Assembly (NCBI GenBank): GCA_002269645.1
Contig: NIVC01000587.1
Location: 124,001-188,000 of the forward strand
DNA length: 64,000 nt
From: Macrostomum lignano
Taxonomy: Eukaryota
Direction of reading: 5' to 3'
A model generated the notes under the pieces. The model was not told where the DNA came from and searched no databases. It saw nothing but the letters and a program-made list of their open reading frames with translations. The position numbers were made by a program, and so were the translations under genes. Shown here piece by piece: positions 3,662 to 45,150 of this stretch; the stretch's first letter is position 1, and each line of letters opens with the position of its first letter.

Positions 3662-4107
3662 GGCTGGCGGCCTGGCCTCGTCATGGCGGCGGGCAAGCGC
3701 AACTACGATGTCAAGGTCGGCGAGGGCATCGTCCAGCGCCACATCGACCAACTCCTGCCAGAGCAGCGTCAGCAGCCTCCAGCAGTACCGGCTGTCGCGG
3801 CACCCGACCGAGTACCACCATCAATCTCCGAAACGACACCGCCGTCTGAGGTGGGCCCGGACAGCTCAACTTCGGAGACTTCGGCAGCGGCCCCGACAGC
3901 TGCTCTCGCTGGACCTGCTCCTGCTCCGATCACAGAAGTCGCCGGACAGCAGGCCGGAGCCATGCGCCGATATCCAGAACGCATTCGGCTCGCGCCTGCC
4001 AGGTTTCAGGCGGGCAGTGATTGAACCTTGTGACACTGACTTCACTCACAAACTAATCTTGAATCACCATGCTTTTTTTCGAGTTTTAACTCCCTGTGGG
4101 GAGGAAG

Positions 4108-4386
4108 TGTCGTGTAGCTCCCAGTATGTGCATGCACTCAGTACGAGTATTGATTTGTATTTGTACTTTCCTATTATTTCTTTCTCTATTATTATCTACG
4201 CAAGCTTGGCACGTTAGGTTTGAGTTATTGCTATTTGAGTTATGGGCAAATTGTGTACGCTTAAATTATGTCATCACTCTCGCGCACGCAGCATCGCTTT
4301 ACAATATAAATACAGACATCAGAGCTTTGATAGCTCTCTCGTAGTCTTCAACCACTTTAAACAAGCAGCATAGCTGATTTACTACA
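4108..4386 (+). mobile_element. 3' LTR (~279 bp)
   Basis: Starts with TGTCGT directly after the PPT. The best terminal inverted match is ACTACA at 4381-4386; an alternative end is GTTACA at 4400. Contains AATATAAA at ~4303. Confidence 0.75.
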
Positions 4387-4615
4387 ATAGTAGTGTTACA
4401 TCCTTTAATCATCAGAAGCAATACTGGATATGCCTTTAATATGCTTATGGATTGATGTGTGTCGTGCTTGTCAATAATGCAAATTGATGACTTATTGTTA
4501 ATGCAGTAATTTCGATTAACAGTAGGAGGACTTTTTATTACGAGCATATTGGCAGAGTATCTCTATAATTAATGCTTATTCTAAGCAGGGTAATTCTCTC
4601 AGATTATCCGCCGGT

Positions 4616-5420
4616 TCAACAGCTGATTCCAGTGTCCAGAATCCAACAAATTCGGTTCATTCCAGTGTCCAGAATCCAACAAATTCGGTTCATTCCAGTG
4701 TCCAGAATCCAACAAATTCGGTTCATTCCAGTGTCCAGAATCCAATCAATTTGGTTCATTCCAGTGTCCAGAATCCAACAAATTCGGTTCATTCCAGTGT
4801 CCAGAATCCAACAAATTCGGTTCATTCCAGTGTCCAGAATCCAACAAATTCGGTTCATTCCAGTGTCCAGAATCCAACAAATTCGGTTCATTCCAGTGTC
4901 CAGAATCCAACAAATTCGGTTCATTCCAGTGTCCAGAATCCAACAAATTCGGTTCATTCCAGTGTCCAGAATCCAATCAATTCAATTCATTTCAATGTCC
5001 ATAATCCAATCAATTCAATTCATTTCAATGTCCATAATCCAATCAATTCAATTCATTTCAATGTCCATAATCCAATCAATTCAATTCATTTCAATGTCCA
5101 GAATCCAATCAATTCAATTCATTTCAATGTCCAGAATCCAATCAATTCAATTCATTCCAATGTCCAGAATCAATCAATTCAATTCATTTCAATGTCCATA
5201 ATCCAATCAATTCAATTCATTTCAATGTCCATAATCCAATCAATTCAATTCATTTCAATGTCCAGAATCCAATCAATTCAATTCATTTCAATGTCCAGAA
5301 TCCAATCAATTCAATTCATTTCAATGTCCATAATCCAATCAATTCAATTCATTTCAATGTCCATAATCCAATCAATTCAATTCATTTCAATGTCCATAAT
5401 CCAATCTATTCGGTTCATTT
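4616..5420. repeat. 33-bp minisatellite with two sequence variants in blocks
   Basis: ATTCCAGTGTCCAGAATCCAACAAATTCGGTTC units switch at ~4975 to ATTTCAATGTCCATAATCCAATCAATTCAATTC. Confidence 0.95.
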
Positions 5421-5565
5421 CAGTTAATTACCTGCCATCAACTTTAAGCATCATTTTGCTTTCAGCAAGAAATTGTCAGCTATCATTTATCAGTTTCTCC
5501 CTTGTAGGGTTTAGGCTTTCATTGTTACCTTTACAATAATTGAGTATTATCGATCTAGTCAATTT

Positions 5566-5777
5566 GGGTTGCTTTCACAAGCGCGAAATTTCACAACCGC
5601 TAAAATTTTTGCACTTACTTTCATATACGACAGTCTTTTTAGCAGTTCATTCATCTATAGATGACATTTCGCGGTTGTGAAGTTTCGCGGTTGTGAAGTT
5701 TTGCGTTTATGAAATTTAGCGCTTATGTAAGTAGTTGATTTAGCGGTTGTGAAATTTCGCGTTTATGAAATCCACCC
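5566..5777. mobile_element. small MITE-like element with imperfect terminal inverted repeats
   Basis: GCGCGAAATTTCACAACCGCTAAA (5581-5604) is inverted at 5738-5761. The match extends imperfectly to GGG (5566) and CCC (5777). Internal repeats of GCGGTTGTGAA. Confidence 0.6.
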
Positions 5778-5800
5778 GTCAATTTTATCGTGTTTCACAG

Positions 5801-18582
<12,782 letters not shown>

Positions 18583-28328: not shown

Positions 28329-28699
28329 AACTGGCCACAATCAAAAATAAGATCGAGTATCTCACATAGAACAGATGCTTCACAAATAAGCAGCCTGTCA
28401 AATTTTCACTCCACTTACGCATTTGTTGTAAACAAATGCTTGAATTCTGCTTGCCTTCAACCTGCTGGCAGTGACGCAGGGGACTAAAAATAAACCAAAA
28501 CCCTTGTGCCTTGTTTTCTTGCCTCAGATTGGCTTGAGAGTTTTCCGCGGGGTTTCTCTGGTATATTTTTGAAAACAACTCTCCGCTGGGGTCGAGGCGG
28601 GGTAGAAATTCTGCTACTCTGCTGTGGCCTTTAAAAGCAATGCAGCTGCTTAATGTAAGAAAGCTTTAACCTCAGCCACTTCAGTAGCAAGTAGACAGC

Positions 28700-29275
28700 A
28701 TGCGTCTTAGCCAGGTGGTTTTCCTGTGCTCACTGCTGCTGCTGCTCACCAGCGCCCAGTCACCGCCCGGGCCCCGCCGGCTGCTCCGCTGTCCCGCCGA
28801 GTTCGCCGTCCTCGTTGAGCCGCTGCCCGACAAGCCAGACGTGCAGCCGGTGCTCACAACCGGCCCCGGTGTCCGGCTGCAGACTGTCCGGTTCCTGCGC
28901 GACTCCAAGCTGCGGCTGGACTCGACCGGCCGACTGTGGCTGAGCGGTGGCACCTCCAGCGGGCCGCACTTCGTGCTGTGCTCCGACACTCAGCACCACG
29001 GCCTCGCCACCTTCTCGCTGTTCGTCAGCCACCAGCCTCCGGGCGACCTGTCATTGTCGTCATCTTCTTTGCAAGCAGACCGGTTTTTAGTTGACGGCAA
29101 GACCACCAAAATTGCCTTGGCCGCAGTCGGAGTCCTCGCCGCCGTCCTGACGGCCGCCCTGGCCTGCGCGGCTGGACTGCGGGATCGGCGAGTTCGCAGC
29201 CAGAGCGCCCGGCCCTACCGCGACTTTCGACACTTCACCGCGGCGGCGAGCAGAGCTCAGAAACTGCCAGTTTGA
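28700..29275 (+). CDS. intronless type I membrane protein, paralog 1 (191 aa)
   Basis: Signal peptide MRLSQVVFLCSLLLLLTSAQ; shared ~95-aa domain (RCPAEF...LRLDSTGRLWL...LCSD); short stalk; TM; tail ending KLPV. Confidence 0.85.
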   Translation: MRLSQVVFLCSLLLLLTSAQSPPGPRRLLRCPAEFAVLVEPLPDKPDVQPVLTTGPGVRLQTVRFLRDSKLRLDSTGRLWLSGGTSSGPHFVLCSDTQHHGLATFSLFVSHQPPGDLSLSSSSLQADRFLVDGKTTKIALAAVGVLAAVLTAALACAAGLRDRRVRSQSARPYRDFRHFTAAASRAQKLPV

Positions 29276-30053
29276 TTTCTGCGACACGGAATCGATAAAA
29301 GATCGATTTATATCGCCGTTGACAATATTTTGTATGCAACATAATAGACGTATTTTTGTAGCACTTCGTAATGAATTGTCATTTTAATTGTACATGCCGG
29401 AAGTAACTGCTTCACGAATCATTTCTGTGAAATATACTTGGCTTGGCATTCCGTTCAAAACATTGCAAATACAAGCGTTTGTAAGGCCGAAATTATTGAA
29501 AGTTTCTCAGCAATCGGACGTTCCTAGCACTTCATTAAGATTTTTTTGGAAGCTAATGAAAATTTTCGGGCAAAAAACACATTGACGAGATAGGAGTTTG
29601 TTCGACTTTTCAGTATTGAATTATTATGGCGGTTTTAAATGCCTTTGGGACTTTGAAAGGGAAGACATGAAAGGTAATTTCAAAGGCTTTGAAAGGTAAG
29701 AGTGTAACTAACAGTTAAAAAGTTAAACAAAATTTTCTGACGTCAATTGCATCAACCGTTAGTTTAGCTACTAGGAACAAACCGTTGTGACATAAGCAGT
29801 CCGTTCCATGTTCTGCATCAGAAATTAGAACAGATTTGTTACTATTTTTAGATTTACGCAAGATATTCATCCGCTTGTAGTGGCCAATGAGCGCGGCTGG
29901 ATTTCCCGCGGGTAAAGGGCTGGAATTCACGGGGTAGTGCCAGCTTCCAAACCACAAGTATATAGAGGCCCGCTGCAGCTGACACTATTTTATACACCCT
30001 GCCAGGTCTGCGAGAACTCTGACGAATATTTTATTCAACTGTTAGTTTAAATA

Positions 30054-30830
30054 ATGCTCAGCGTCATCAAGCTGCTGGCAGTGTGGCCCCTGCTGCTGCT
30101 GCTTGCCAGCGCCCAGTCACCGCCCGGGCCCCGACGGCTGCTCCGCTGTCCAGCCGAGCTCTCCACCCTCGTGGAGCCGCTGCCCGACAATCCGGACGTG
30201 CAGCCGGTGCTCACGACCGGCCCCGGTGTCCGACTACAGACTGTCCGATTCATGCGGGCCTCCAAACTGAGGCTGGACTCGGCCGGCCGACTGTGGCTGA
30301 TCGGCGGCAACTTCAGCAGGTCGGCTGGCAATCGCTTCAGCGGGCCGCACGTGCTGCTGTGCTCCGACACGAAGCACCGCGGCTTCATCACTTTCTCGCT
30401 GTTCGTCAGAATGGCACCGGACATCACCGAGGTCGACACTTCAGACTCTCTGCCTGAAGCAACCGCGACATCAGCTGCTCCGTCTGCAACCACCAAGACC
30501 TCCGCTGTTCCGTCTACAGCTGTCAAGGCATCAGCCGCTCCGGAGAGGCTCGCCTCCGCTCCCGCCTCCGCCGCCAACCGAGCCGTCAGCCGCATCGACG
30601 ACCCGCTGTTCTGCGCTCTCGCCGCTGCCGTCCTGTTGCTCCTCGCGATCTGCGTCGCTCTCGCCTTCGCCCTTTTAGCCGTCGGCCGTCGCAGCCACCG
30701 TCGCACCACCCAGCGAGGTCTGAAGGGTCCGATCTTCAAACCGATCGTCAAGGGCAGCGCCGAGCCGCTGTTCCAGCAGAGCAAGCCAACTTCGCATGAA
30801 GTCGTGATCCTCGAGCGCGATCAAGTCTAA
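30054..30830 (+). CDS. intronless type I membrane protein, paralog 2 (258 aa)
   Basis: Signal peptide, same ectodomain, S/T/A-rich stalk, TM (LFCALAAAVLLLLAICVALAFALLAV), tail ending RDQV. Confidence 0.87.
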   Translation: MLSVIKLLAVWPLLLLLASAQSPPGPRRLLRCPAELSTLVEPLPDNPDVQPVLTTGPGVRLQTVRFMRASKLRLDSAGRLWLIGGNFSRSAGNRFSGPHVLLCSDTKHRGFITFSLFVRMAPDITEVDTSDSLPEATATSAAPSATTKTSAVPSTAVKASAAPERLASAPASAANRAVSRIDDPLFCALAAAVLLLLAICVALAFALLAVGRRSHRRTTQRGLKGPIFKPIVKGSAEPLFQQSKPTSHEVVILERDQV

Positions 30831-31304
30831 TTGCGATGGTTACTAATGACAGTTTTGCCTAGTCTCTTTCAGTGCTTCATTGACGGCTCAAACTTGTACA
30901 TATCTTTGAGTTCCAGGCGTTCCTTATTGCGAGTATGATTTTATTCATCTGAAATATCATTCAGACTCATTGATGTATTACATTATTATTCTTCTTCTTA
31001 TTAGCTTACACGTTTCCAATCCATACACTACGAGCGTTTATAATACATACTACATACATACAATACTACATACTATAATACATACATACAATATGTATTT
31101 TACGAATGATACATACTGACATTCGTAAAAATGTTTTGTCAGTACCTAACTGATACCCAAGTATGTGATCGATTTCCGAAATATACAACTAATATTCAAT
31201 AATTATCCAGATTTTGCCTTTCTATTGATTTGTTATTCAATTCAACAAGTTGAGGTTAACAAAATCTTTTGTTGGGTAAAACAAGCTTTCGCGCCTCAGA
31301 TATC

Positions 31305-34300
31305 AGCATCCCCCTGTGTCATGGCACCTCAGAATTCCCCTGTGTCATGGCACCTCAGCATTCCCCCTGTGTCATGGCACCTCAGAATTCCCCCTGTGTC
31401 ATGACACCTCAGCATTCCCCCTGTGTCATGACACCTCAGCATTCCCCCTGTGTCATGGCACCTCAGCATTCCCCCTGTGTGATGGCACCTCAGCATTCCC
31501 CTGTGTCATGGCACCTCAGCATTCCCCCTGTGTCATGGCACCTCAGCATTCCCCCTGTGTCATGGCACCTCAGCATTCCCCCTGTGTCATGGCACCTCAG
31601 AATTCCCCCTGTGTCATGACACCTCAGCATTCCCCCTGTGTCATGGCACCTCAGAATTCCCCCTGTGTCATGACACCTCAGCATTCCCCCTGTGTGATGG
31701 CACCTCAGCATTCCCCCTGTGTCATGGCACCTCAGAATTCCCCCTGTGTCATGACACCTCAGCATTCCCCCTGTGTCATGGCACCTCAGAATTCCCCCTG
31801 TGTCATGACACCTCAGCATTCCCCCTGTGTCATGACACCTCAGCATTCCCCCTGTGTCATGGCACCTCAGCATTCCCCCTGTGTCATGGCACCTCAGAAT
31901 TCCCCTGTGTCATGGCACCTCAGCATTCCCCCTGTGTCATGGCACCTCAGCATTCCCCCTGTGTCATGGCACCTCAGAATTCCCCCTGTGTCATGACACC
32001 TCAGCATTCCCCCTGTGTCATGGTACCTCAGCATTCCCCCTGTGTCATGGCACCTCAGCATTCCCCTTGTGTGATGGCACCTCAGCATTCCCCCTGTGTC
32101 ATGGCACCTCAGCATTCTCCCTGTGTCATGGCACCTCAGAATTCCCCCTGTGTCATGACACCTCAGCATCCCCCCTGTGTCATGGCACCTCAGCATTCCC
32201 CCTGTGTGATGGCACCTCAGCATTCCCCCTGTGTTATGGTACCTCAGCATTCCCCCTGTGTCATGGCACCTCAGCATTCTCCCTGTGTCATGGCACCTCA
32301 GCATTCCCCCTGTGTCATGACACCTCAGAATTCCCCCTGTGTCATGGCACCTCAGCATTCCCCCTGTGTCATGACACCTCAGAATTCCCCTTGTGGCATG
32401 ACACCTCAGCATCCCCCCTGTGTCATGGCACCTCAGCATTCCCCCTGTGTGATGGCACCTCAGCATTCCCCCTGTGTCATGACACCTCAGCATTCCCCCT
32501 GTGTCATGGCACCTCAGCATTCCCCTTGTGTGATGGCACCTCAGCATTCCCCCTGTGTCATGGCACCTCAGAATTCCCCCTGTGTCATGACACCTCAGCA
32601 TTCCCCCTGTGTCATGGCACCTCAGAATTCCCCCTGTGTCATGGTACCTCAGCATTCCCCCTGTGTCATGGCACCTCAGAATTCCCCCTGTGTCATGGCA
32701 CCTCAGAATTCCCCCTGTGTCATGGCACCTCAGCATTCCCCCTGTGTCATGGCACCTCAGCATTCCCCCTGTGTGATGGCACCTCAGCATTCCCCCTGTG
32801 TCATGGCACCTCAGCATTCCCCCTGTGTCATGGCACCTCAGAATCCCCCTTGTGTGATGGCACCTCAGCATTCCCCCTGTGTGATGGCACCTCAGCATTC
32901 CCCTGTGTCATGGCACCTCAGCATTCCCCCTGTGTCATGGCACCTCAGCATTCCCCCTGTGTCATGGCACCTCAGCATTCCCCCTGTGTCATGGCACCTC
33001 AGAATTCCCCCTGTGTCATGACACCTCAGCATTCCCCCTGTGTCATGGCACCTCAGAATTCCCCCTGTGTCATGACACCTCAGCATTCCCCCTGTGTCAT
33101 GGCACCTCAGCATTCCCCCTGTGTCATGGCACCTCAGAATTCCCCCTGTGTCATGACACCTCAGCATTCCCCCTGTGTCATGGCACCTCAGAATTCCCCC
33201 TGTGTCATGACACCTCAGCATTCCCCCTGTGTCATGACACCTCAGCATTCCCCCTGTGTCATGGCACCTCAGCATCCCCCTGTGTCATGGCACCTCAGAA
33301 TTCCCCTGTGTCATGGCACCTCAGCATTCCCCCTGTGTCATGGCACCTCAGCATTCCCCCTGTGTCATGGCACCTCAGAATTCCCCCTGTGTCATGACAC
33401 CTCAGCATTCCCCCTGTGTCATGGTACCTCAGCATTCCCCCTGTGTCATGGCACCTCAGCATTCCCCTTGTGTGATGGCACCTCAGCATTCCCCCTGTGT
33501 CATGGCACCTCAGCATTCTCCCTGTGTCATGGCACCTCAGAATTCCCCCTGTGTCATGACACCTCAGCATCCCCCCTGTGTCATGGCACCTCAGCATTCC
33601 CCCTGTGTGATGGCACCTCAGCATTCCCCCTGTGTTATGGTACCTCAGCATTCCCCCTGTGTCATGGCACCTCAGCATTCTTCCTGTGTCATGGCACCTC
33701 AGCATTCCCCCTGTGTCATGACACCTCAGAATTCCCCTTGTGGCATGACACCTCAGCATCCCCCCTGTGTCATGGCACCTCAGCATTCCCCCTGTGTGAT
33801 GGCACCTCAGCATTCCCCCTGTGTCATGACACCTCAGCATTCCCCCTGTGTCATGGCACCTCAGCATTCCCCTTGTGTGATGGCACCTCAGCATTCCCCC
33901 TGTGTCATGGCACCTCAGAATTCCCCCTGTGTCATGACACCTCAGCATTCCCCCTGTGTCATGGCACCTCAGAATTCCCCCTGTGTCATGACACCTCAGC
34001 ATTCCCCCTGTGTCATGGCACCTCAGAATTCCCCTTGTGTGATGGCACCTCAGCATCCCCCCTGTGTCATGGCACCTCAGCATTCCCCCTGTGTCATGGC
34101 ACCTCAGCATCCCCCCTGTGTCATGGCACCTCAGCATTCCCCCTGTGTCATGGCACCTCAGCATCCCCCCTGTGTCATGGCACCTCAGCATTCCCACTGT
34201 GTCATGACACCTCAGCATTCCCCCTGTGTCATGGCACCTCAGAATTCCCCTTGTGTGATGGCACCTCAGCATTCCCCCTGTGTCATGGCACCTCAGCATT

Positions 34301-35150
34301 CCCCCTGTGTGATGGCACCTCAGCATTCCCCCTGTGTCATGGCACCTCAGCATTCCCCCTGTGTCATGGCACCTCAGCATTCCCCCTGTGTCATGGCACC
34401 TCAGCATTCCCCCTGTGTCATGGCACCTCAGCATTCCCCCTGTGTCATGGCACCTCAGCATTCCCCCTGTGTGATGGGACCTCAGAATTCCCCCTGTGTG
34501 ATGGCACCTCAGCATTCCCCCTGTGTGATGGCACCTCAGCATTCCCCCTGTGTCATGACACCTCAGCATTCCCCCTGTGTCATGGCACCTCAGAATTCCC
34601 CCTGTGTGATGGCACCTCAGCATTCCCCCTGTGTGATGGCACCTCAGCATTCCCACTGTGTCATGGCACCTCAGAATTCCCCCTGTGTCATGGCACCTCA
34701 GCATTCCCCCTGTGTCATGGCACCTCAGCATTCCCCCTGTGTCATGGCACCTCAGCATTCCCCCTGTGTCATGGCACCTCAGCATTCCCCCTGTGTCATG
34801 GCACCTCAGCATTCCCCTGTGTCATGGCACCTCAGCATTCCCCCTGTGTCATGGCACCTCAGCATTCCCCCTGTGTCATGGCACCTCAGCATTCCCCCTG
34901 TGTCATGGCACCTCAGCATTCCCCCTGTGTCATGGCACCTCAGCATTCCCCCTGTGTCATGGCACCTCAGCATTCCCCCTGTGTCATGGCACCTCAGCAT
35001 TCCCCCTGTGTCATGGCACCTCAGCATTCCCCCTGTGTCATGGCACCTCAGAATTCCCCCTTTGTGTGATGGCACCTCAGAATTCCCCCTGTGTCATGGC
35101 ACCTCAGAATTCCCCTTGTATAATGGCACCTCAGCATTCCCCCTGTGTGT
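31305..35150. repeat. 27-bp satellite array (~140 monomers)
   Basis: CCTCAGCATTCCCCCTGTGTCATGGCA. This is the source of the MAPQHSPCV / PLCHGTSAF pseudo-ORFs. Confidence 0.98.
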
Positions 35151-35614
35151 TGTACGAACATTACACAGTCGCAATGGGGAGTATTGTACTTAGCGGTAGA
35201 CAGGGGTATGGGGGATTGGGATGTCGGTAGGCACCTGAAATTTTTATCGTTTGCCAAATCTGAAGCATCGTCAAGATCTGATGGACGGGTGGGTATGTCG
35301 AAATTAGGGACTCAAGCTATGCCTTTATCAAGTAGGCAGTTTATAATGGTTGTAAAAGTAAACGTAATAAAAGTAAACTGACAAAAAGTCAACAACGTAA
35401 CCAAGAAACTTCACGCTCTATTGGTGCTTGACAGTAAATTTTAAATTTATGGCAACAGTCAACAACGGATGAAACAATAATGTCAATACAAGCGTAGGTA
35501 AGAGTATGAATACAAATTATCTATAGTTATTAATATATACTTATAAAGTCAGTAATATTGAATCATCTATTTGAGTACTTTCGATATTCAAGCCGTATAT
35601 TTTGGCAGGCGTTC

Positions 35615-36225
35615 GAGGCAGATGTTCAGTAGGTGTTCAAGCCAGAAGCTCAGCAGGTGTTCAAGCCAGAAGCTCAGCAGGTGTTCAAGCCAGAAGCTCA
35701 GCAGGTGTTCAAGCCAGATGTTCAGCAGGTGTTCAAGCCAGATTCTCAGCAGGTGTTCAAGCCAGATGCTCAGCAGGTGTTCGAGCCAGATGTTCAGCAG
35801 GTGTTCAAGCCAGAAGCTCAGCAGGTGTTCAAGCCAGATGTTCAGCAGGTGTTCAAGCCAGATGTTCAGCAGGTGTTCAAGCCAGATGTTCAGCAGGTGT
35901 TCAAGCCAGATGTTCAGCAGGTGTTCAAGCCAGATGTTCAGCAGGTGTTCAAGCCAGATGTTCAGCAGGTGTTCAAGCCAGATGCTCAGTAGGTGTTCAA
36001 GCCAGATGCTCAGCAGGTGTTCGAGCCAGATGCTCAGCGGGTGTTCGAGCCAGATGTTCAGCAGGTGTTCGAGCCAGATGTTCAGCAGGTGTTCGAGCCA
36101 GATGTTCAGCAGGTGTTCGAGCCAGATGCTCAGCAGGTCTTTGAGCCAGATTCTCAGCAGGTGTTCGAGCCAGATGCTCAGCAGGTGTTCAAGCCAGATG
36201 CTCAGCAGGTGTTCGAGCCAGATGC
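35615..36225. repeat. 24-bp minisatellite (left arm)
   Basis: GTTCAAGCCAGATGTTCAGCAGGT units. Confidence 0.95.
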
Positions 36226-36274
36226 GCCGGAGGCACCACTTCTAAAACACAGCGTCTTCATTCTCTGACTTCCT

Positions 36275-36354
36275 GTTGCACTGGCGGGAGTCGAACCCGC
36301 GCCAGCTCGTTCGTTCTCAGGACGAGTTGCTCTACCGTTAAGCTACAGTGCAAC
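36275..36354 (-). ncRNA. tRNA-like Pol III unit with enlarged anticodon loop (copy 1)
   Basis: Acceptor TGCACTG/CAGTGCA, D arm GCTT..GAGC, T arm GCGGG-TTCGACT-CCCGC. A and B boxes are present, with an upstream TATAAA and a downstream TTTT. Confidence 0.65.
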
Positions 36355-36695
36355 CGGAACAGTCTGCTCTCAGCTGGACCGATTGAATCACAATTTATAG
36401 CCCAGCTTAGTTGGATAATTCCGGAGTCATGGAAAAGCCACGCCATCCTTTGTGAATTATTGAGCTAAAATTAGCGAGTATTTTAAGGAGGGCCGGCGGG
36501 GAAAGTCGCCTATTTTAAGCTCAAGCCGAATGTAAAGTCGTAGAAGTAATAAAATCGTCACAAGGAACTGGCGGCTCAAGTTGTGTTCACAACTTGCAGC
36601 GGCCACTCAGAGCTGCGGTCTATTTAGAGACAGTTTGTGTGCTAAAAATAGCCGCCACTTAGGCCCGGCTTCACTTGGAGATTAAATCTGTTGAC

Positions 36696-37365
36696 CTGTG
36701 TCATTGTACCTCAGCATTCCCCCTGTGTCATGGCACCTCAGAATTCCCCGTGTGTCATGGCACCTCAGCATTCCCCCTGTGTTATGGTACCTCAGCATTC
36801 CCCTTGTGTGATGGCACCTCAGCATTCCCCCTGTGTTATGGTACCTCAGCATTCCCCCTGTGTTATGGTACCTCAGCATTCCCCCTGTGTTATGGTACCT
36901 CAGCATTCCCCCTGTGTGATGGCACCTCAGCATTCCCACTGTGTCATGGCACCTCAGCATTCTCCCTGTGTCATGGCACCTCAGCATTCTCCCTGTGTCA
37001 TGGCACCTCAGCATTCCCCCTGTGTCATGGCACCTCAGCATTCCCCCTGTGTCATGGGACCTCAGCATTCTCCCTGTGTGATGGCACCTCAGCATTCCCC
37101 CTGTGTCATGGCACCTCAGCATTCCCCCTGTGTCATGGCACCTCAGCATTCTCCCTGTGTCATGGCACCTCAGCATTCTCCCTGTGTGATGGCACCTCAG
37201 CATTCCCCCTGTGTCATGGCACCTCAGCATTCCCCCTGTGTCATGGCACCTCAGCATTCCCCCTGTGTGATGGCACCTCAGCATTCCCCCTGTGTCATGG
37301 CACCTCAGCATTCCCCCTGTGTCATGGCACCTCAGCATTCCCCCTGTGTCAGGGCACCTCAGCAA
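36696..37365. repeat. second block of the 27-bp satellite, in the foldback spacer
   Basis: Same monomer and same orientation as 31305-35150. Confidence 0.97.
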
Positions 37366-37847
37366 TACTGAGATATACTGTAACAAGTCATATAACACCA
37401 TAGTGATATGCTCAATGATTCAGAATTTTGAATACAATAAAAAGTTGAGAGAGAGATAACTTTAATTATTGAAATGTTTTCTGTGTCTTTCAAAAGTAAT
37501 ACCTGTAAAAATGATTCATCTGCTGCAGCAGTACAGATTCAATCTCCAAGTGAAGAGGAGCCCAAGGGGCGGCTATTTTTAGCACATAAACTGTCTCTAA
37601 ATAGACTGCAGCTCTGAGTGGCCGCTTCACGTCTTGAATACAATTATTAAAAGTAATATTACTTCTACGACTGTTACACACAACTAGAGTTTAAAATAGG
37701 CGATTGCCTCTTAAAAAAGGCCCCTCCTTAAAATAGCTCAAATAATTCACAAAGGATGGCGTGGCTTTTCCATGACTCCGGAATTATCCAACTAAGCTGG
37801 GCTATAAATTGTGATTCAAGCAGTCCAGATGAGAGCAGACAGCTAAG

Positions 37848-37928
37848 GTTGCACTGTAGCTTTAGCGGTAGAGCAACTCGTCCTGAGGACGGACGAGCTG
37901 GCGCGGGTTCGACTCCCGCCAGTGCAAC
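37848..37928 (+). ncRNA. tRNA-like Pol III unit with enlarged anticodon loop (copy 2)
   Basis: GT-TGCACTG TA GCTT TAGCGGTA GAGC A ACTCG TCCTGAGGACGGA CGAGC TGGC GCGGG TTCGACT CCCGC CAGTGCA-AC. TATAAA at 37803-37808 and TTTT at 37956-37959. Confidence 0.65.
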
Positions 37929-37977
37929 AGGAAGTCAGAGAATGAAAACCGTGTGTTTTAGAAGTGGTGCCTCCGGC

Positions 37978-38510
37978 GCATCTGGCTCGAACACCTGCTG
38001 AGCATCTGGCTCGAACACCTGCTGAACATCTGGCTTGAACACCTGCTGAGCATCTGGCTTGAACACCTGCTGAGCATCTGGCTCGAACACCTGCTGAACA
38101 TCTGGCTTGAACACCTGCTGAACATCTGGCTCGAACACCTGCTGAGCATCTGGCCTGAATACTTGCTGAGCATCTGGCTTGAACACCTGCTGAACATCTG
38201 GCTCGAACACCTGCTGAACATCTGGCTCGAACACCTGCTGAACATCTGGCTTGAACACCTGCTGAACATCTGGCTCGAACACCTGCTGAACATCTGGCCT
38301 GAATACTTGCTGAGCATCTGGCTTGAACACCTGCTGAACACCTGCTGAGCATCTGGCTTGAAGACCTGCTGAGCATCTGGCTTGAAGACCTGCTGAGCAT
38401 CTGCTGAGCATCTGGCTTGAAGACCTGCTGAGCATCTGCTGAGCATCTGGCTTGAAGACCTGCTGAGCATCTGCTGAACATCTGGCTTGAAGACCTGCTG
38501 AGCATCTGCT
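37978..38510. repeat. 24-bp minisatellite (right arm, inverted)
   Basis: ACCTGCTGAACATCTGGCTTGAAC units. Confidence 0.95.
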
Positions 38511-38747
38511 AGAATATATGGCTTGAATATCTAAAGTATTTTAATAGATTATTCGATTGACAATATTGATAATATAAACATTAGGCATTGTAGATCCACT
38601 GCATTCATATTCTTACCCACACCTGTACTGACTTTTTCGTTTTATCCTTTGATGAATTTTGTAGCTTTTGTTGAATTTTTTGCCACCATACATTCACTGT
38701 CAAACATAGATAGAGCGTGAAGTTTCTGCTTTCGTGTAGTTTCTTTC

Positions 38748-39880
38748 TCAGCCTGAGAATCTGAGGGGGGCAGTGGCACAGCCTGAGAATCTGAGGGGGG
38801 GGCGGTGGCCCAGCCTGAGAATCTGAGGGGGGGGGGGCGGTGGCCCAGCCTGAGAATCTGAGGGGGGGCGGTGGCCCAGCCTGAGAATCTGAGGGGGGGG
38901 CGGTGGCCCAGCCTGAGAATCTGAGGGGGGGGCGGTGGCCCAGCCTGAGAATCTGAGGGGGGGGGCGGTGGCACAGCCTGAGAATCTGAGGAGGGGCGGT
39001 GGCACAGCCTGAGAATCTGAGGAGGGGCGGTGGCACAGCCTGAGAATCTGAGGAGGGGCGGTGGCCCAGCCTGAGAATCTGAGGAGGGGCGGTGGCCCAG
39101 CCTGAGAATCTGAGGAGGGGCGGTGGCCCAGCCTGAGAATCTGAGGAGGGGCGGTGGCACAGCCTGAGAATCTGAGGAGGGGCGGTGGCCCAGCCTGAGA
39201 ATCTGAGGAGGGGCGGTGGCCCAGCCTGAGAATCTGAGGGGGGGGCGGTGGCACAGCCTGAGAATCTGAGGAGGGGCGGTGGCACAGCCTGAGAATCTGA
39301 GGAGGGGCGGTGGCACAGCCTGAGAATCTGAGGAGGGGCGGTGGCCCAGCCTGAGAATCTGAGGAGGGGCGGTGGCACAGCCTGAGAATCTGAGGAGGGG
39401 CGGTGGCACAGCCTGAGAATCTGAGGAGGGGCGGTGGCCCAGCCTGAGAATCTGAGGAGGGGCGGTGGCCCAGCCTGAGAATCTGAGGAGGGGCGGTGGC
39501 ACAGCCTGAGAATCTGAGGAGGGGCGGTGGCACAGCCTGAGAATCTGAGGAGGGGCGGTGGCCCAGCCTGAGAATCTGAGGAGGGGCGGTGGCACAGCCT
39601 GAGAATCTGAGGAGGGGCGGTGGCACAGCCTGAGAATCTGAGGAGGGGCGGTGGCCCAGCCTGAGAATCTGAGGAGGGGCGGTGGCCCAGCCTGAGAATC
39701 TGAGGAGGGGCGGTGGCACAGCCTGAGAATCTGAGGAGGGGCGGTGGCACAGCCTGAGAATCTGAGGAGGGGCGGTGGCCCAGCCTGAGAATCTGAGGAG
39801 GGGCGGTGGCACAGCCTGAGAATCTGAGGAGGGGCGGTGGCACAGCCTGAGAATCTGAGGAGGGGCGGTGGCCCAGCCTG
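38748..39880. repeat. 31-bp G-rich minisatellite
   Basis: CAGCCTGAGAATCTGAGGAGGGGCGGTGGC(A/C), about 36 copies. Confidence 0.97.
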
Positions 39881-40426
39881 AAAAAAGCTACTTACTACTA
39901 AGTCTAAGGTGTCTAAAACTCATAAAATACATAAATTAAGTAATTTTACAGTTTTTGGTGCCTTTTTTTAGCTTCCTAGAGCACTGCTTCCGCAATTGAC
40001 AGTCTGCATTTGCCGACAAAGTAATAAAAATCTTCGATGTAAATAGAAAATCCGCGTTAAAAAAACTAGTTTTTTGTGTTCCGTGTGGCAGTCGTCAGAT
40101 ATAGCCGCAGTGAGCCTATTTTTGGATGGGTCATGCGGATGCCAACAAGAACCATCCTCCCCTCCCACTGAGCCACAAATGAGCTCTAGATATATACTAG
40201 ACTCAGCCTGCTCAACTGACAATGGCAAGGGGCAGTCGGGCTACCCAGAGAAACCCGTGAGAGGGGTTGAAACCATGAGTTATGCGGAGGCTAATTTGCT
40301 TATTCATCTATCCACGCCGCTCTACCCTCGGGTCCGCCGCGAGCACTATTTAAAGCTGTGCGAGAGCTTTGAGAACATTGAGCTCAGCTCTCTAGTAAAT
40401 CTGCGCTAGCCTCTACAGACTCTGAA

Positions 40427-41077
40427 ATGAACTTTGCTGGAATCCTTCTCGCTGCACTGCTGCTCTGCGTAACGGCAGCTGCTGCCCAGCCACCGCCCGG
40501 GCCCCACCGGCTGCTCCGATGTCCCGCCGAGTTTGCCGCCCTCGTTGAACCGCTGCCCGACGACCCGAACCTGCAGCCGGTGCTCACGACCGGCCCTGGT
40601 GTCCGGCTGCAGACTGTCCGGTTCTTGCGCGACTCCGAGCTGAGGCTGGACTCGGCCGGCCGACTGTGGCTGAACGTTGGCGCCTCCAGCAGGTCGGCCG
40701 GCAGCCGCTTCAGCGGGCCGCACCATCTGGAGTGCCAAAACGGCCAGAAAACTGTCAGCTTCGTGCTGTACATCCGCCTGAGGACAGAGGCGCTGGCAAA
40801 TCCTGTGACAACGGCACCGCATAACAGTTCAGCAGCTGCTGCTGAGAGCATCGGTGGACTCAGTCCGAGGGAGCTGGTCCTGGCTGGAACTGCACTGCTG
40901 CTCCTACTGGCCTGCCTCTGCCTCACAGCTGCTCTCGTGGTGGTGTCAACAAGGCGAACCTGCTGCTGGCAGTACAGGCAAAAGAAAATATTCGTGCCGC
41001 CCACAGGTCTGAAGAGCGGGCACCAGCAGCTGCTGGGCAAGTCGCTAGGGGAGTTTCGCGAGGTCACGGATGTCTGA
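40427..41077 (+). CDS. intronless type I membrane protein, paralog 3 (216 aa)
   Basis: Signal peptide MNFAGILLAALLLCVTAAAAQ, same ectodomain, short stalk, TM, tail ending EVTDV. Confidence 0.87.
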   Translation: MNFAGILLAALLLCVTAAAAQPPPGPHRLLRCPAEFAALVEPLPDDPNLQPVLTTGPGVRLQTVRFLRDSELRLDSAGRLWLNVGASSRSAGSRFSGPHHLECQNGQKTVSFVLYIRLRTEALANPVTTAPHNSSAAAAESIGGLSPRELVLAGTALLLLLACLCLTAALVVVSTRRTCCWQYRQKKIFVPPTGLKSGHQQLLGKSLGEFREVTDV

Positions 41078-41531
41078 CATTCTTTGCTGTTTTTTTCTAA
41101 CTCCTTGACAATGTTAAAACAAATCTGCGCTTTTTGTTATTTATTCATGGGAACGGAACAATATACCGCATCAAGACTGTTAATAATCTGTTTTATTATT
41201 TTGCACCAATGACTCGAATTGCATAACGAATTTAGTAAAATTTATTTACTCAGTTGTGAAAGTTTAGCACATGTTTACTGAATAACAATGTCTTCATTAT
41301 TTGATAACAATCAATTAAATTACTCCTGCATGCATAATGGAAAAATATATTCAGACAGACAGCTAAGTGCCTATGAGATTCAGGATAAAGCTGGAAAGAA
41401 TATGCAGTGAAAAACTTCAACTCATCCAAAAAAGAATACATGTACAGTATTGTCTATCGAGTAAAAATATCTGCAAAGAATGACAGATTAACCATAATCT
41501 TCTCAGTTCGAAAAGGTTCCTAATCTGCTTT

Positions 41532-42434
41532 TCAAACTTCCATCTTGACCTCCTCGCTCTGTTGAAACAGCGGCTCGGCGCTGCACCCCAGGTTGGAGAC
41601 GAAGATCGGGTCCTTCAGACCACGCTGGGTGCAGCGACGTCGGCGAAGGGCGACTACAAGGGCGACGACGAGAGCGACGCAAATCGCGAGGAGCAACAGG
41701 ACGGCTGCGGCGAGAGCGCAGAACAGCGGGTCGTCGATGCGACTGACGGCTCCGTTGGCGGGATCTGCGGCGAGCCTCTCGGGAGCGGCTGATACCGTGA
41801 CAGCTGCAGACGGAGCAGCGGAGGTCTTGGTGGCTGCAGACGGAGCAGCGGAGGTCTTGGTGGCTGCAGACGGAGCAGCGGAGGTCTTGGTGGCTGCAGA
41901 CGGAGCAGCGGAGGTCTTGGTGGCTGCAGACGGAGCAGCGGAGGTCTTGGTGGTTGCAGACGGAGCAGCGGAGGTCTTGGTGGCTGCAGACGGAGCAGCG
42001 GAGGTCTTGGTGGCTGCAGACGGAGGAGCTGATGTCGCGGTTGCTTCAGGCAGAGCGTCTGAAGTGTTGACCTCGGTGATGTCCGGCGCCAGTCTGACGA
42101 ACAGCGAGAAGGTGATGAGGCCGCGGCGCTCGGTGTCGGAGCACAGCAGCACGTGCGGCCCGCTGAAGCGGTTGCCAGCCAACCTGCTGCTCAGCCACAG
42201 TTGGCCGTTCGAGTCCAGCCGCAGCTCGGAGTCCCGCAGGAACCCGACAGTCTGCAGCCGGACACCGGGGCCGGTCGTGAGCACGGGCTGCACGTCCGGA
42301 TTGTCGGGCAGCGGCTCAACGAAGGCGGCGAACTCCTCTGGACAGCGGAGCAGCCGGCGGGGTTCGGGCGGTGACTGGGCGCTGGCCAGCAGCAGAAGCA
42401 GCGGGCACAGGAAAATCACCTGGCTGAGATGCAT
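41532..42434 (-). CDS. intronless type I membrane protein, paralog 4 (300 aa from ATG 42434)
   Basis: Signal peptide MHLSQVIFLCPLLLLLASAQ, same ectodomain, stalk with ~7 copies of a 30-bp SAAPSAATKT repeat (~41808-42022), TM, tail ending KMEV. The upstream 34 codons in the ORF track are AT-rich and probably UTR. Confidence 0.87.
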   Translation of the reverse strand: MHLSQVIFLCPLLLLLASAQSPPEPRRLLRCPEEFAAFVEPLPDNPDVQPVLTTGPGVRLQTVGFLRDSELRLDSNGQLWLSSRLAGNRFSGPHVLLCSDTERRGLITFSLFVRLAPDITEVNTSDALPEATATSAPPSAATKTSAAPSAATKTSAAPSATTKTSAAPSAATKTSAAPSAATKTSAAPSAATKTSAAPSAATKTSAAPSAAVTVSAAPERLAADPANGAVSRIDDPLFCALAAAVLLLLAICVALVVALVVALRRRRCTQRGLKDPIFVSNLGCSAEPLFQQSEEVKMEV

Positions 42435-42627
42435 TTTTGTATCCGAAGTTTGTGATTCGAGTGTCTGAGCGTTTTTAAATTTTTCTTTTACGCTTTTATA
42501 ATTGCTGAATAAAAAACCTTGGAACTTCTGTTTCAAAAATGCTTGGAATTTCCACGATTGCCGCTACTGTCTACCCGCAGAATGAGGCAATGAGCCCGTG
42601 GTGCTCAGTTACTGTACAGCCCTGTGC

Positions 42628-42852: not shown

Positions 42853-45150
42853 TTTTTTTAAACAGTTGGATGTCCAATATCCTGGATGTTCAGCTAGCCA
42901 GACGTTTCACCAGGTGTTATAGGTATATCCTGCAACGCCGTGTGGGCCGCCGCCAGCCAGAGCGTCGCCTCAGCATCCTGGGTTACGCCGATGATCTCGC
43001 TCTGCTGTCCTCAACCGTCGAGGTCGCCCAACGTCAGCTGGACCGTCTGGTTGGTGTTGCTGCGAGCGTCGGCCTGGTGATCAACACGCAAAAGACCGTC
43101 GTGCTCACCATGCCCACCAACATCCAAGCCGACATCTACTGCCGAGGCGCTGATGGGCAGGCAATGCTGCTGCCGCGCGTTCAGCAGTTCGTGTACCTCG
43201 GCGGCCTGGTACCCGACGCCTTCGACGACCTGAGGCGTCGCCGTGGACTCGCTTGGGCGGCCTTCAACTCCATGAGGACCGTCCTGCACTCTGCGGCCCT
43301 GCCAGACCGTCAGCGCTCGGCGTTGTTCCAGGCGGTGATCGAGACCGTCCTGCTCTACAACGCTGAAACATGGACGCTGACGGAGACGCTCGAGCGACAG
43401 GTCGACGCGGCGCACGCCGGCCTGCTGCGCGCTGCCTTCAAGATCGGCGGCGGCGAGCATGCCACCAACGCGGCGCTGTACGCCCGAGCTCGCCTGGCCC
43501 GCCCCAGCGATCTGCTTCGCCGCCGGCGGCTCCAGCTGGCAGGCCACCTCATCCGCGCTGAGGCGTACTGCCCCGAGCCGGCGCAGGAGGCGCTGCTGCT
43601 TGCGCTCCCGGCGCCCTTCCGGCGGGGGCAGGCGCGAACTCGGCGGTATCCGGACTGCCTGCTGGCCGATGCTGGCGCCCCCGACCAGGCCGGTGGACCG
43701 GCCTTTCTCCGCTCCCGTGCTCTGAGGCGCGACCTGTGACGCCCAACATCGACCCTGGGGCGTAACTTGTTGTTGTTGTTGTTGTATAGGTATATGCTCT
43801 CGAAGAGAACCGGGATTGGAACGAGTGAGTGAGCCTGGCCCTGGTAAAGACCGGGCAGTGGCAGATAAAGTGCTCGGCGCTTTCACTGCCTGAGCTACAG
43901 AAGGGGCACCGCTCCTCAGGTACCTGGCCCTGAAGAAAGCGATGGCGATAGAAGCAGCCATGGGGGAGTGGGCCATGCTGACTGCTCTGAGGTCGCTGCA
44001 GTGGAGCCTAAGGAGGGCTCTACGCATGAGATGGGAAGGCAGGGGACGGCAGCGCGGGATTTCCTGCAATTTTGAGTGGTCGTGTCACCTGCGGAGATGC
44101 TTGGAGTCAGCTCAGCGCTTAACGCGGGAATTGATCCCCGAGGCGAGGATAGGGGCCCCTGTGCGGAGCCAGCCTTGACCAGCAGGTCAACGCACTCGTT
44201 GCCAGTTGCGAAGTTGAGTCTAGTATGCTTGGAGTAGCTCCGCACCGCTTCTCTCTTGATAAGGACGCAAGCTCCGAAGTTTGAGAGACCAATGCCTCAT
44301 AGAGCCGTCAGTGTAACAGTGGACTTCGGAATCGCTCCAGCTGTCACTCGCCTCGTGTCGAGGCTGAACAGTGACCTTCTACCTCTGTCTCAGGAGAAGG
44401 GTGGCTTGAATCGAGTCCGTGAGGATGTTGAGCCCGCCACACTTCTCGAGAGTCTTGAGGCAGATGTCGGAGTGCGGGATAAGCGACCGCTTCTTAAAGG
44501 CCCGCACCTTTTTAAAGGCCACCCCAGCATCCAGAAGGCACCGGGTGCTCTTCGCCGCCTCTTCTTTTCATATAAATATCCAGAGAAGGATCATGTATTC
44601 AAAAGGAGCAGACAGTGGAGCGCTCATAGTCATGCGGCAGGCTCTGCCCTGGATTTTGTAGAGAGCGTCGAGGTTGCTCAGACCGCTAGCCCACACGGGG
44701 CTGGCGTAACTGATCGAGGGGTGGACAGTGGCAGCGTAAATCCACCACAGCTTCCTGGGGGTGAGCTCCCAGGTGGACCGCCAGGGCTTTTTTGCTTCAG
44801 CTTGGATGTGGGGGTCCAGTTAAGGCTGTGGTCTAGAGTGAGGCCCAGGCAGCAGACCTGCTTCTCCATAGAAATGTCACATTTCCAGAGCAGTTTGTTG
44901 GAAAACATGACCACTGTGGTTTGCAACTCTGAGAGCCTGAGACCACATTGGTTTGCTCAACGCTGCATAGCCCACTATAAATGAGGTCATGAAAATCCCT
45001 ACAAAACAACTAATTCATGACCATGTTCCAAAGAACAGGGGTAAGGACAATGAGAGGCTGGGTTGTCCTGGATTTCAAGGGCTCTGCCAAAGGCCTCGAA
45101 GATCATATTGTCGAAGGCCTCCTCAATGTCCAGGAAAAGCGCGAGCTTTT
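42853..45150 (-). mobile_element. degenerate RNase H-containing LINE (LOA/I-group-like), 5'-truncated, interrupted by an RTE
   Basis: Frameshifted minus-strand motifs in order: ALFLDIEEAFDN (~45140), CLGLTLDHSLNW, LTPRKLWWIYAATVHPSISYASPVW, VHCYTDGS (RNase H), GNECVDLLVKAG, and the CCHC finger CPFCSSGSESAEHFICHCP (~43900). A possible A-tail lies at 42853-42859; the left boundary is uncertain. Confidence 0.82.
42929..43784 (+). mobile_element. 5'-truncated RTE-clade LINE with intact RT C-terminal frame and (TTG)n tail
   Basis: GYADDL, FVYLGG, LLYNAETWTL, RRRRLQLAGH; stop at 43739; (TTG)6 tail; 11-bp TSD TATAGGTATAT at 42918-42928 and 43785-43795. Confidence 0.93.

What the first reader, a model, noticed from the sequence alone, without database searches (positions are those of the whole stretch)
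28700..42434. Cluster of four intronless mini-receptors with a single degenerate cadherin-like ectodomain: candidate lineage-specific recognition family
Seen: four paralogs share signal peptide, a ~95-aa domain with two conserved Cys (RCP, LCSD/LECQ), stalk, TM and a 30-48-aa tail. The N-terminal two-thirds of the domain is nearly invariant (VQPVLTTGPGVRLQTVRFLRDS.LRLDS.GRLWL), while the last strand, stalk and tail diverge. All other genes in this window have introns. Inference: the pattern PxEF..LVE...LRLDS.G.L.L...L.C.D....F.L.V resembles a cadherin beta-sandwich that lacks the DxD, LDRE and DxNDN calcium motifs. Clustered, intronless, variable surface proteins of this type are typical of immune, allorecognition, adhesion or gamete-recognition systems. 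I do not recognise the family.
Basis: partly seen in the sequence, partly recalled or inferred. Interest (0 to 1): 0.8.

Follow-up and report, generated by a model that had tools for sequence, protein, structure and literature searches.

The report
Orphan flatworm membrane glycoprotein gene cluster
Four small, intron-free genes in the flatworm Macrostomum lignano encode related single-pass surface glycoproteins found in no other organism searched; they are real genes, but the proposed cadherin likeness has no support and their function is still unknown.

Summary
The window (Macrostomum lignano, NIVC01000587.1) carries exactly four paralogous single-exon ORFs. Each has a signal peptide, a ~90-100-aa head with two conserved Cys, a Ser/Thr/Ala/Pro stalk, a TM helix and a 31-48-aa tail.

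- **Other copies:** the four-gene locus occurs twice more in the assembly.
- **Constraint:** between locus copies pN/pS is about 0.4, and ectodomain indels are in frame.
- **Expression:** GenBank models for genes 1-3 come from transcripts. Gene 4 has no model.
- **Range:** an exhaustive HMMER search of 1.84 billion representatives found relatives only in M. lignano.
- **Cadherin claim not supported:** no Pfam or PDB hit at E<=10, calcium motifs and tandem repeats are absent, two AlphaFold runs failed (pLDDT 47 and 40), and Foldseek found nothing. The LRLDSxGRLWL motif matches one NHL/SGL propeller blade about as weakly (hhalign probability 63%).
- **Invariant core:** paralog similarity stops at the CDS edges, core dS is only 0.13-0.27, and 18 of 43 between-locus differences recur in other paralogs. 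This points mainly to gene conversion.

My reading is an orphan family of mucin-like type I membrane glycoproteins. A recognition role is untested. Interest is modest.

The parts
28700..29275 (+). Gene 1 CDS, 191 aa, single exon. Signal peptide aa 1-19, head aa 20-109 (Cys31, Cys94), short stalk, TM about aa 135-161, tail ending -LPV.
   Evidence: Annotated transcript-derived CDS P0001.
30054..30830 (+). Gene 2 CDS, 258 aa, single exon. Signal peptide, head (Cys32, Cys103, one NFS sequon), 64-aa stalk with 64% S/T/P/A, TM about aa 180-214, 48-aa tail ending -DQV.
   Evidence: Annotated CDS P0006.
40427..41077 (+). Gene 3 CDS, 216 aa, the most divergent paralog. Its own signal peptide, head (Cys32, Cys103, LECQ), 31-aa stalk with an NSS sequon, TM about aa 145-177, tail ending -TDV (class I PDZ-ligand-like).
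   Evidence: Not annotated on this contig, but its copy on NIVC01001406.1 is annotated (P0004).
41532..42434 (-). Gene 4 CDS, 300 aa from the ATG, inverted relative to genes 1-3 and convergent with gene 3. It has a 121-aa stalk, TM about aa 232-268 and a tail ending -MEV.
   Evidence: No annotated model in any of the three locus copies.
41803..42036 (-). 30-bp (10-aa, TSAAPSAATK) tandem repeat, 7.8 copies, inside the gene 4 stalk. Copy number differs between locus copies, giving proteins of 300, 264 and 254 aa.
28757..29038 (+). Conserved head-coding segment of gene 1, matched by the family consensus.
   Evidence: tblastn E 6e-49. Paralog nucleotide similarity is limited to this part of the CDS.
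30114..30419 (+). Conserved head-coding segment of gene 2.
   Evidence: E 3e-61
40508..40780 (+). Conserved head-coding segment of gene 3. About 240 bp of it is the only part similar to the other paralogs at DNA level (83-87% identity).
42084..42377 (-). Conserved head-coding segment of gene 4.
   Evidence: E 1e-55
28630..28636 (+). TATA-like box (TTTAAAA) 70 nt upstream of the gene 1 ATG. Similar boxes lie about 95 nt upstream of gene 2 (TATATAG, near 29959), 80 nt upstream of gene 3 (TATTTAAA, 40347-40354) and 66 nt upstream of gene 4 (TATAAAA, 42500-42494, minus strand).
   Evidence: These are sequence motifs only, and weak evidence in AT-rich flanks.
31303..39881 (.). Block of tandem-repeat arrays between genes 2 and 3, with periods 27, 24, 27, 24 (inverted) and 31 bp. 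It is not coding, and the long ORFs in it are repeat artefacts. Its length differs between locus copies.

Best explanation
These four genes form a taxonomically restricted (so far Macrostomum lignano-only) family of small type I single-pass membrane glycoproteins.

**Architecture.** Each gene is a single exon. It encodes:
- a cleavable signal peptide (A-x-A then Q);
- a ~90-100-aa head that is proline-rich at its N-terminus and beta-rich at its C-terminus, probably stapled by one disulfide (RCP...LC);
- a Ser/Thr/Ala/Pro-rich stalk, presumably O-glycosylated, of variable length;
- a TM helix followed by basic residues;
- a short cytoplasmic tail that always ends in Val.

**Inferred mechanism.** The head is held above the membrane on a mucin-like stalk as a binding surface. 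The C-terminal Val (-TDV, -DQV, -MEV, -LPV) acts as an ER-export signal and/or PDZ-scaffold ligand.

**Evolution.** The family evolves by concerted evolution. Gene conversion between paralogs keeps a ~240-bp core nearly identical. The last strand, stalk (including a VNTR), TM and tail diverge.

**What is shown and what is inferred.**
- Shown: the anatomy, copy number, restriction to M. lignano in the databases searched, purifying constraint, and the signature of gene conversion.
- Inferred: surface location, glycosylation, the disulfide, the role of the tail, and any ligand.

The head is not a demonstrable cadherin domain.
For: **Anatomy and conservation:**

**Real, constrained genes**
- Three syntenic copies of the four-gene locus exist, and 11 of the 12 ORFs are intact.
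- All ectodomain indels are whole codons.
- pN/pS between locus copies is 0.39-0.42, with P about 1e-5 for an excess of synonymous changes.

**Expression:** the GenBank CDSs for genes 1, 2 and 3 come from an annotation built only from RNA-seq-derived transcripts (PMC5730564).

**Coding strand:** the CDSs are 64-67% GC (GC3 72-79%) within AT-rich flanks that carry TATA-like and poly(A)-signal motifs in the sense orientation.

**Restriction to M. lignano:**

**Gene conversion**
- Paralog DNA similarity ends at the CDS borders.
- Core dS is only 0.13-0.27.
- 18 of 43 W-versus-H differences in the head have both alleles present in other paralogs.
- Seven of the 25 W2/H2 differences fall within 24 nt (P=0.0007).
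- CDS divergence between loci is 104/2787, against 51/2126 in the flanks (my arithmetic on the counts).
Against: - There is no experimental or homology evidence for localisation, glycosylation or a ligand.
- The structure predictions were too poor to define a fold.
- Genes 1 and 3 have short stalks that are only moderately S/T/P/A-rich (39-55%).
- Gene 4 has no annotated transcript in any locus copy, and gene 3 has one in only one copy.
- pN/pS cannot separate the sense frame from the wobble-aligned antisense frame (0.42 versus 0.41).
- The tail endings fit no single PDZ class.
- Expression tables could not be queried for these gene IDs.
Confidence: 0.6

Rival explanations
1. Degenerate cadherin-like adhesion receptors. 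The head would be a calcium-independent cadherin beta-sandwich that mediates adhesion.
For: The motif order PxEF..LVE ... LRLDSxGxLWL ... FSLFV loosely parallels the cadherin order PxF..v.E ... FxIDxxTGxI ... YxLxV. This rests on the sequence itself and my own recollection, not on a test. AlphaFold places 4-5 beta strands in the C-terminal half.
Against: - No cadherin-family Pfam hit for any of the four proteins at E<=10.
- No cadherin among PDB chains at E<=10.
- No DxD, DRE or DxNDN motifs, and a single domain instead of tandem repeats (visible in the sequence).
- Foldseek gave best E 1.7 with no cadherin, although the model was poor.
- The same motif aligns equally weakly to an NHL/SGL blade.
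Confidence: 0.05
2. A lineage-specific recognition system (self/non-self, mating partner, gamete or microbe). The variable last strand and stalk would confer specificity, under diversifying selection.
For: - dN/dS is 1.0-2.4 in the C-terminal third of the head between gene 1 or gene 3 and the other paralogs, against 0.3-0.6 in the core.
- CDSs diverge more than their flanks between locus copies.
- Variation is mosaic, conversion-driven and clustered.
- The stalk VNTR varies in copy number.
- The genes are clustered and lineage-restricted.
Against: - There are only four paralogs and no large repertoire.
- The omega>1 values rest on 20-29 synonymous sites and are not individually significant.
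- The three locus copies come from one inbred line with duplicated chromosomes, so they are not a population sample (PMC5730564).
- Overall pN/pS is about 0.4.
- No expression or phenotype data are available.
Confidence: 0.12
3. The head derives from, or works like, a single NHL/SGL-type beta-propeller blade that must oligomerise to form a propeller-like assembly.
For: The only non-Macrostomum hit in 1.84e9 representatives is a bacterial protein with about 12 NHL/SGL blades (P0005, E 3e-6 summed over 8 stretches). hhalign of the family against its blades gives probability 63% over 29 columns: GV.LQT......L.LDS.G.LW.
Against: - Only one of the very many NHL proteins was hit, and only through summed repeats.
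- No NHL or SGL Pfam hit for the flatworm proteins.
- The match is 29 columns at 34% identity.
- The head holds a single unit.
Confidence: 0.04
4. These are not functional protein genes as read. Either they are neutrally drifting young ORFs, or the real product is encoded on the antisense strand, which carries 227-291-aa ORFs over genes 2-4.
For: - Antisense ORFs cover almost all of genes 2, 3 and 4.
- The antisense -1 frame shows the same pN/pS as the sense frame (0.41 versus 0.42).
- The gene 1 W/H comparison gives omega 0.92.
- One gene 1 copy is frameshifted.
- No homologs exist elsewhere.
Against: - The sense products have a coherent architecture conserved in all 12 copies: signal peptide with an AxA site, TM, and positive-inside basic residues.
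- They start at ATG with TATA-like boxes upstream and poly(A) signals downstream.
- The transcript-derived GenBank CDSs are on the sense strand.
- The antisense ORFs start at TTG or GTG, are low-complexity (R/S/A-rich), and are broken in gene 1 (102 aa).
- The -1 frame shares wobble positions with the sense frame, so it stays open simply because GC3 is high and Tyr codons are few.
- The frameshift lies in a C homopolymer of a PacBio-based assembly, and the near-identical third copy is intact.
Confidence: 0.07

Closest known systems
Small mucin-like type I membrane sialoglycoproteins (a functional class, e.g. podoplanin, CD164/endolyn, glycophorins)
   Same: Signal peptide, a short extracellular part, a Ser/Thr/Pro/Ala-rich stalk with tandem repeats and variable repeat number, one TM helix and a short basic cytoplasmic tail.
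   Different: No sequence homology to any of them. These proteins have a distinct, conserved two-Cys N-terminal head. Glycosylation is not shown.
Cadherin extracellular (EC) domain, Pfam PF00028 and relatives
   Same: Similar size (~100 aa), beta-rich C-terminal half, and a hxhDxxGxhxh hairpin motif with a loose parallel in motif order.
   Different: No HMM, PDB or Foldseek support. No calcium-binding motifs. A single domain instead of tandem repeats. A conserved Cys pair that is not a cadherin feature.
NHL / SMP-30-gluconolactonase (SGL) beta-propeller blade
   Same: The core GVRLQTV......LRLDSAGRLWL aligns to the blade consensus GVLMQTL......LVFDSQGHLWV.
   Different: Marginal statistics (hhalign probability 63%). 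One unit rather than 6 or more. No Pfam NHL or SGL hit.
Clustered protocadherin variable exons
   Same: A cluster of single-exon units, each encoding signal peptide, ectodomain, TM and proximal tail, each apparently with its own promoter.
   Different: Each ORF ends in its own stop codon with its own tail. Gene 4 is inverted. There are no shared constant exons and no cadherin repeats.

Membership tests
Cadherin superfamily (EC domain) | Significant match to the cadherin-domain profile (PF00028 or related Pfam families), or to solved cadherin chains | tested here: not met
   hmmscan of all four proteins at E<=10 returned no cadherin family. A profile search of PDB sequences at E<=10 returned only an aminotransferase at E 1.3.
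Cadherin superfamily (EC domain) | Calcium-binding motifs at domain boundaries (PE, DxD, LDRE, DxNDN) | tested here: not met
   Read directly from the aligned sequences. None of the paralogs has DxD, DRE or DxNDN.
Cadherin superfamily (EC domain) | Two or more tandem EC repeats | tested here: not met
   There is one head domain per protein, followed directly by the stalk and TM.
Cadherin superfamily (EC domain) | Seven-strand Greek-key beta-sandwich fold | tested here: inconclusive
   AlphaFold2 gave pLDDT 46.9 for the full length and 39.9 for the head. Foldseek against PDB gave best E 1.7 and probability 0.12, with no cadherin. The models are too poor to decide.
NHL/SGL beta-propeller | Match to NHL (PF01436) or SGL (PF08450) profiles | tested here: not met
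   None of the four proteins hit either profile. P0005, the bacterial hit, matches both strongly.
NHL/SGL beta-propeller | Five to six or more tandem blades closing a propeller | tested here: not met
   Only one blade-like unit aligns (29 columns, hhalign probability 63%).
Mucin-like type I membrane glycoproteins (architectural class, not a homology family) | Signal peptide, S/T/P-rich and often tandemly repeated stalk, single TM, short tail | tested here: met
   Hydropathy and composition analysis. The stalks are 64% and 76% S/T/P/A in genes 2 and 4, and only 39% and 55% in genes 1 and 3. Gene 4 has a 10-aa repeat in 7.8 copies.
Mucin-like type I membrane glycoproteins (architectural class, not a homology family) | Dense O-glycosylation and cell-surface location | not testable with these tools
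   Needs biochemistry and imaging.
Clustered-protocadherin-type variable/constant gene organisation | Variable exons in one orientation, spliced to shared constant exons | tested here: not met
   Each ORF has its own stop codon and its own tail, and gene 4 is on the opposite strand. The annotated CDSs are complete single exons.
PDZ-ligand-bearing membrane proteins | C-terminal x-[S/T]-x-hydrophobic motif (class I) or related classes, binding a PDZ domain | tested here: inconclusive
   All 12 copies end in Val. Only gene 3 (-TDV) fits class I. Binding was not tested.

The most novel reading that the evidence does not exclude
The head is a previously undescribed extracellular fold, and the four-gene cluster is a Macrostomum-specific recognition module (for example partner, gamete or self recognition in this reciprocally mating hermaphrodite). 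In this reading, specificity lies in the fast-evolving last strand and the variable-length stalk, and diversity is generated by gene conversion among paralogs and among duplicated chromosome copies.
Probability: 0.1. Interest if true: 0.6.

Novelty: new variant of a known kind. Interest (0 to 1): 0.27.

Why it matters
If the products are real surface proteins, they add a flatworm-restricted membrane glycoprotein family whose head domain has no detectable relatives. M. lignano has RNAi and transgenesis, so function could be tested directly. The locus is also a compact example of concerted evolution: a conversion-homogenised core next to rapidly diverging segments, replicated on duplicated chromosomes.

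On present evidence this remains one of many uncharacterised lineage-specific gene families in this genome. It does not bear on cadherin evolution or on any established recognition system.

Tried and rejected
**Homology searches**
- Pfam scan of the four proteins found only sub-threshold low-complexity hits: Mucin, SOG2, Stevor, DUF7074.
- A PDB sequence profile search found nothing.
- The two word-indexed homolog searches returned only the window's own protein and a frameshifted copy. They missed known copies, so I do not rely on them.
- The exhaustive HMMER search found only M. lignano proteins plus one bacterial NHL-repeat protein. I followed up the NHL lead with Pfam and hhalign and rated it marginal.
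- Scans of viral and metagenome contigs found no relatives.

**Structure**
- AlphaFold2 on the full length and on the head alone gave unusable models.
- Foldseek on the poor head model gave nothing meaningful.

**Expression**
- I looked for the gene IDs Mlig010170, Mlig008551 and Mlig009548 in full texts and in the held supplements of four M. lignano papers. None was found.
- A search for a single-cell atlas returned none for M. lignano among the ten listed papers.

**Other points**
- dN/dS cannot be used to choose the coding strand, because the wobble-aligned antisense frame scores the same.
- The UniProt model A0A1I8IJA8 ('ZU5 domain-containing', 1147 aa) is a chimera that reads through gene 3 into antisense gene 4. 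It shows no ZU5 hit, so I dropped it.
- The g1/g2 suffixes in the gene names mark near-identical copies, not positions in a polycistron.

Full report
**Source and observation**

The window is Macrostomum lignano assembly GCA_002269645.1, contig NIVC01000587.1. Window position 28700 corresponds to contig position 152700.

- W1: 28700-29275 (+), 191 aa
- W2: 30054-30830 (+), 258 aa
- W3: 40427-41077 (+), 216 aa
- W4: 41532-42434 (-), 300 aa from its ATG

They align with 49-53% identity overall and 60-77% in the head. The invariant positions include both cysteines and the QPVLTTGPGVRLQTV / LRLDS.G.LWL stretch. tblastn with the family consensus finds exactly four copies in the 64 kb (E 1e-42 to 1e-61), and every other hit has E>=0.9.

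Hydropathy and composition analysis gives the following:
- an N-terminal signal-like segment ending in A-x-A before Gln;
- two extracellular Cys;
- zero or one N-glycosylation sequon;
- a stalk of 28-121 aa, 39-76% Ser/Thr/Pro/Ala;
- one TM segment followed by Arg/Lys;
- tails of about 31-48 aa.

**Are they genes?**

Two further syntenic copies of the whole four-gene locus exist, on NIVC01000330.1 (L001, 'H') and NIVC01001406.1 (L003, 'T'). This fits the duplicated chromosomes of the DV1 line (PMC5730564).

Eleven of the twelve ORFs are intact. The exception, H1, lacks one C in a C-run. Its near-identical T copy is intact, so this may be an assembly error.

All indels in the head are whole codons. 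Summed over the four genes, W versus H gives Sd 50 and Nd 54, so pN/pS is 0.42 (P=9e-6). W versus T gives 0.39.

The CDSs are 64-67% GC (GC3 72-79%) inside AT-rich flanks. Each has a TATA-like box 66-95 nt upstream of its ATG and poly(A)-signal-like hexamers downstream.

GenBank carries single-exon CDS models for genes 1 and 2 on all three contigs and for gene 3 on one. That annotation was built solely from RNA-seq-derived transcripts, so at least genes 1-3 are transcribed. Gene 4 has no model. One possible reason is that transcripts overlapping annotated repeats were filtered out. I could not find these gene IDs in any held expression table.

**A caveat on strand**

Genes 2-4 also carry nearly full-length antisense ORFs. 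The antisense -1 frame shows the same pN/pS as the sense frame (0.41). This is because its wobble positions coincide with those of the sense frame, and because high GC3 with few Tyr codons keeps it free of stops.

The sense strand is preferred on other grounds: the coherent signal-peptide and TM architecture, ATG starts, promoter and poly(A) motifs, and the strand of the annotated transcripts.

**What is the head domain?**

- No Pfam family, cadherin included, matches at E<=10.
- A profile search of PDB sequences gives only an aminotransferase at E 1.3.
- AlphaFold2 with the shallow family alignment gave mean pLDDT 46.9 for full-length W3 and 39.9 for the W2 head. Only 4-5 strands were predicted, all in the C-terminal half.
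- Foldseek with the head model returned no match below E 1.7.
- The calcium motifs that define cadherin repeats are absent, and there is a single domain.

The exhaustive HMMER search of 1.84 billion representatives returned only M. lignano proteins plus one bacterial protein made of NHL/SGL propeller blades. The family core aligns to one blade with hhalign probability 63% over 29 columns.

So the LRLDSxGRLWL motif is a generic strand-turn-strand signature shared by cadherins, propellers and other families. It identifies no family, and the fold remains undetermined.

**Evolutionary dynamics**

Nucleotide similarity between paralogs starts at or just after the ATG and ends inside the CDS. For gene 3 it is a single ~240-bp island of 83-87% identity. 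No flank similarity is detectable, even for the closest pair, genes 2 and 4.

In this core, paralog dS is only 0.13-0.27 with dN/dS 0.3-0.6. The signal-peptide region of gene 3 is saturated. The C-terminal third of the head shows dN/dS of about 1-2.4 between gene 1 or gene 3 and the others, on few sites.

Between locus copies the CDSs differ more (104/2787 sites) than their flanks do (51/2126 sites).

Of the 43 W/H differences in the head, 18 have both alleles present in other paralogs. The W2/H2 differences are clustered, with 7 in 24 nt (P=0.0007). The S/P difference at alignment column 133 co-varies in genes 2 and 4 by locus.

Together these results indicate recurrent gene conversion among paralogs. 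The 'nearly invariant' core is therefore largely a homogenised tract, not simply a strongly constrained protein surface.

The gene 4 stalk contains a 30-bp VNTR whose copy number differs between loci, giving proteins of 300, 264 and 254 aa.

**Interpretation**

The best-supported description is an orphan family of small mucin-like type I membrane glycoproteins. A novel two-Cys head sits on a variable stalk, and the tail ends in Val, which may serve ER export or PDZ binding (inference).

A role in recognition is compatible with the variable segments but is not demonstrated. There are only four paralogs, and the three locus copies come from one laboratory line.

The cadherin-like label should be dropped. 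Lineage restriction holds for the databases available here. Other Macrostomum genomes and transcriptomes could not be searched.

**Context**

The rest of the window is dominated by tandem arrays and retroelements:
- an LTR-retrotransposon pol (RT, RNase H, integrase) at 79-3418;
- a non-LTR RT fragment at 42870-43739, next to the gene 4 promoter;
- neighbouring host genes with no Pfam domain.

Noticed in passing
window 30047-30784 (-), 40384-41067 (-), 41593-42468 (+), 28681-28989 (-): Long antisense ORFs (245, 227, 291 and 102 aa) overlap the four genes in the wobble-aligned -1 frame. They show the same pN/pS as the sense frame. I take them to be shadow ORFs caused by high GC3 and few Tyr codons, not genes.
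   Followed up: partly
window 31303-39881; L001 about 12400-16900; L003 about 3900-9500: About 8.5 kb of tandem arrays (27-, 24-, 27-, inverted 24- and 31-bp units) lie between genes 2 and 3. The gene 2 to gene 3 spacer is 9.6 kb here, against 5.3 kb and 6.4 kb in the other two locus copies. The 24-bp arrays form an inverted pair (35605-36225 and 37979-38508).
   Followed up: partly
L001 10001-10575: The gene 1 copy on NIVC01000330.1 lacks one C in a C homopolymer (GGCCCCGG to GGCCCGG), which splits the ORF into 80 + 100 aa. GenBank annotates the 80-aa stub (PAA85390.1). The near-identical copy on NIVC01001406.1 is intact, so this is either a sequencing error or a very recent pseudogene.
   Followed up: partly
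window 79-3418: An LTR-retrotransposon pol region with an intact-looking RT, RNase H and integrase (Pfam RVT_1, RT_RNaseH, rve, Integrase_H2C2).
   Followed up: partly
window 42870-43739: A fragment of a reverse-transcriptase ORF (RVT_1 C-terminal part, E 1e-5) lies about 440 bp beyond the gene 4 start codon, on the opposite strand to gene 4.
   Followed up: no
UniProt A0A1I8IJA8 (P0007): An older ab initio model of 1147 aa named 'ZU5 domain-containing protein' begins with the gene 3 protein and then reads through antisense gene 4 and downstream sequence. It has no ZU5 Pfam hit and looks like a chimeric prediction.
   Followed up: yes
window 17686-18582 (+): An ORF ends in a TM-like segment (VLILLGCCCCGLLMLLALL) followed by about 21 residues (...SISQPNGAPY, then stop). 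This is reminiscent of a KASH-type tail-anchored C-terminus, but there is no Pfam hit.
   Followed up: no
L003 10684-13345 versus window 41078-41531: The spacer between convergent genes 3 and 4 is 454 bp in the window and in L001, but about 2.7 kb in L003. This suggests an insertion in that copy.
   Followed up: no
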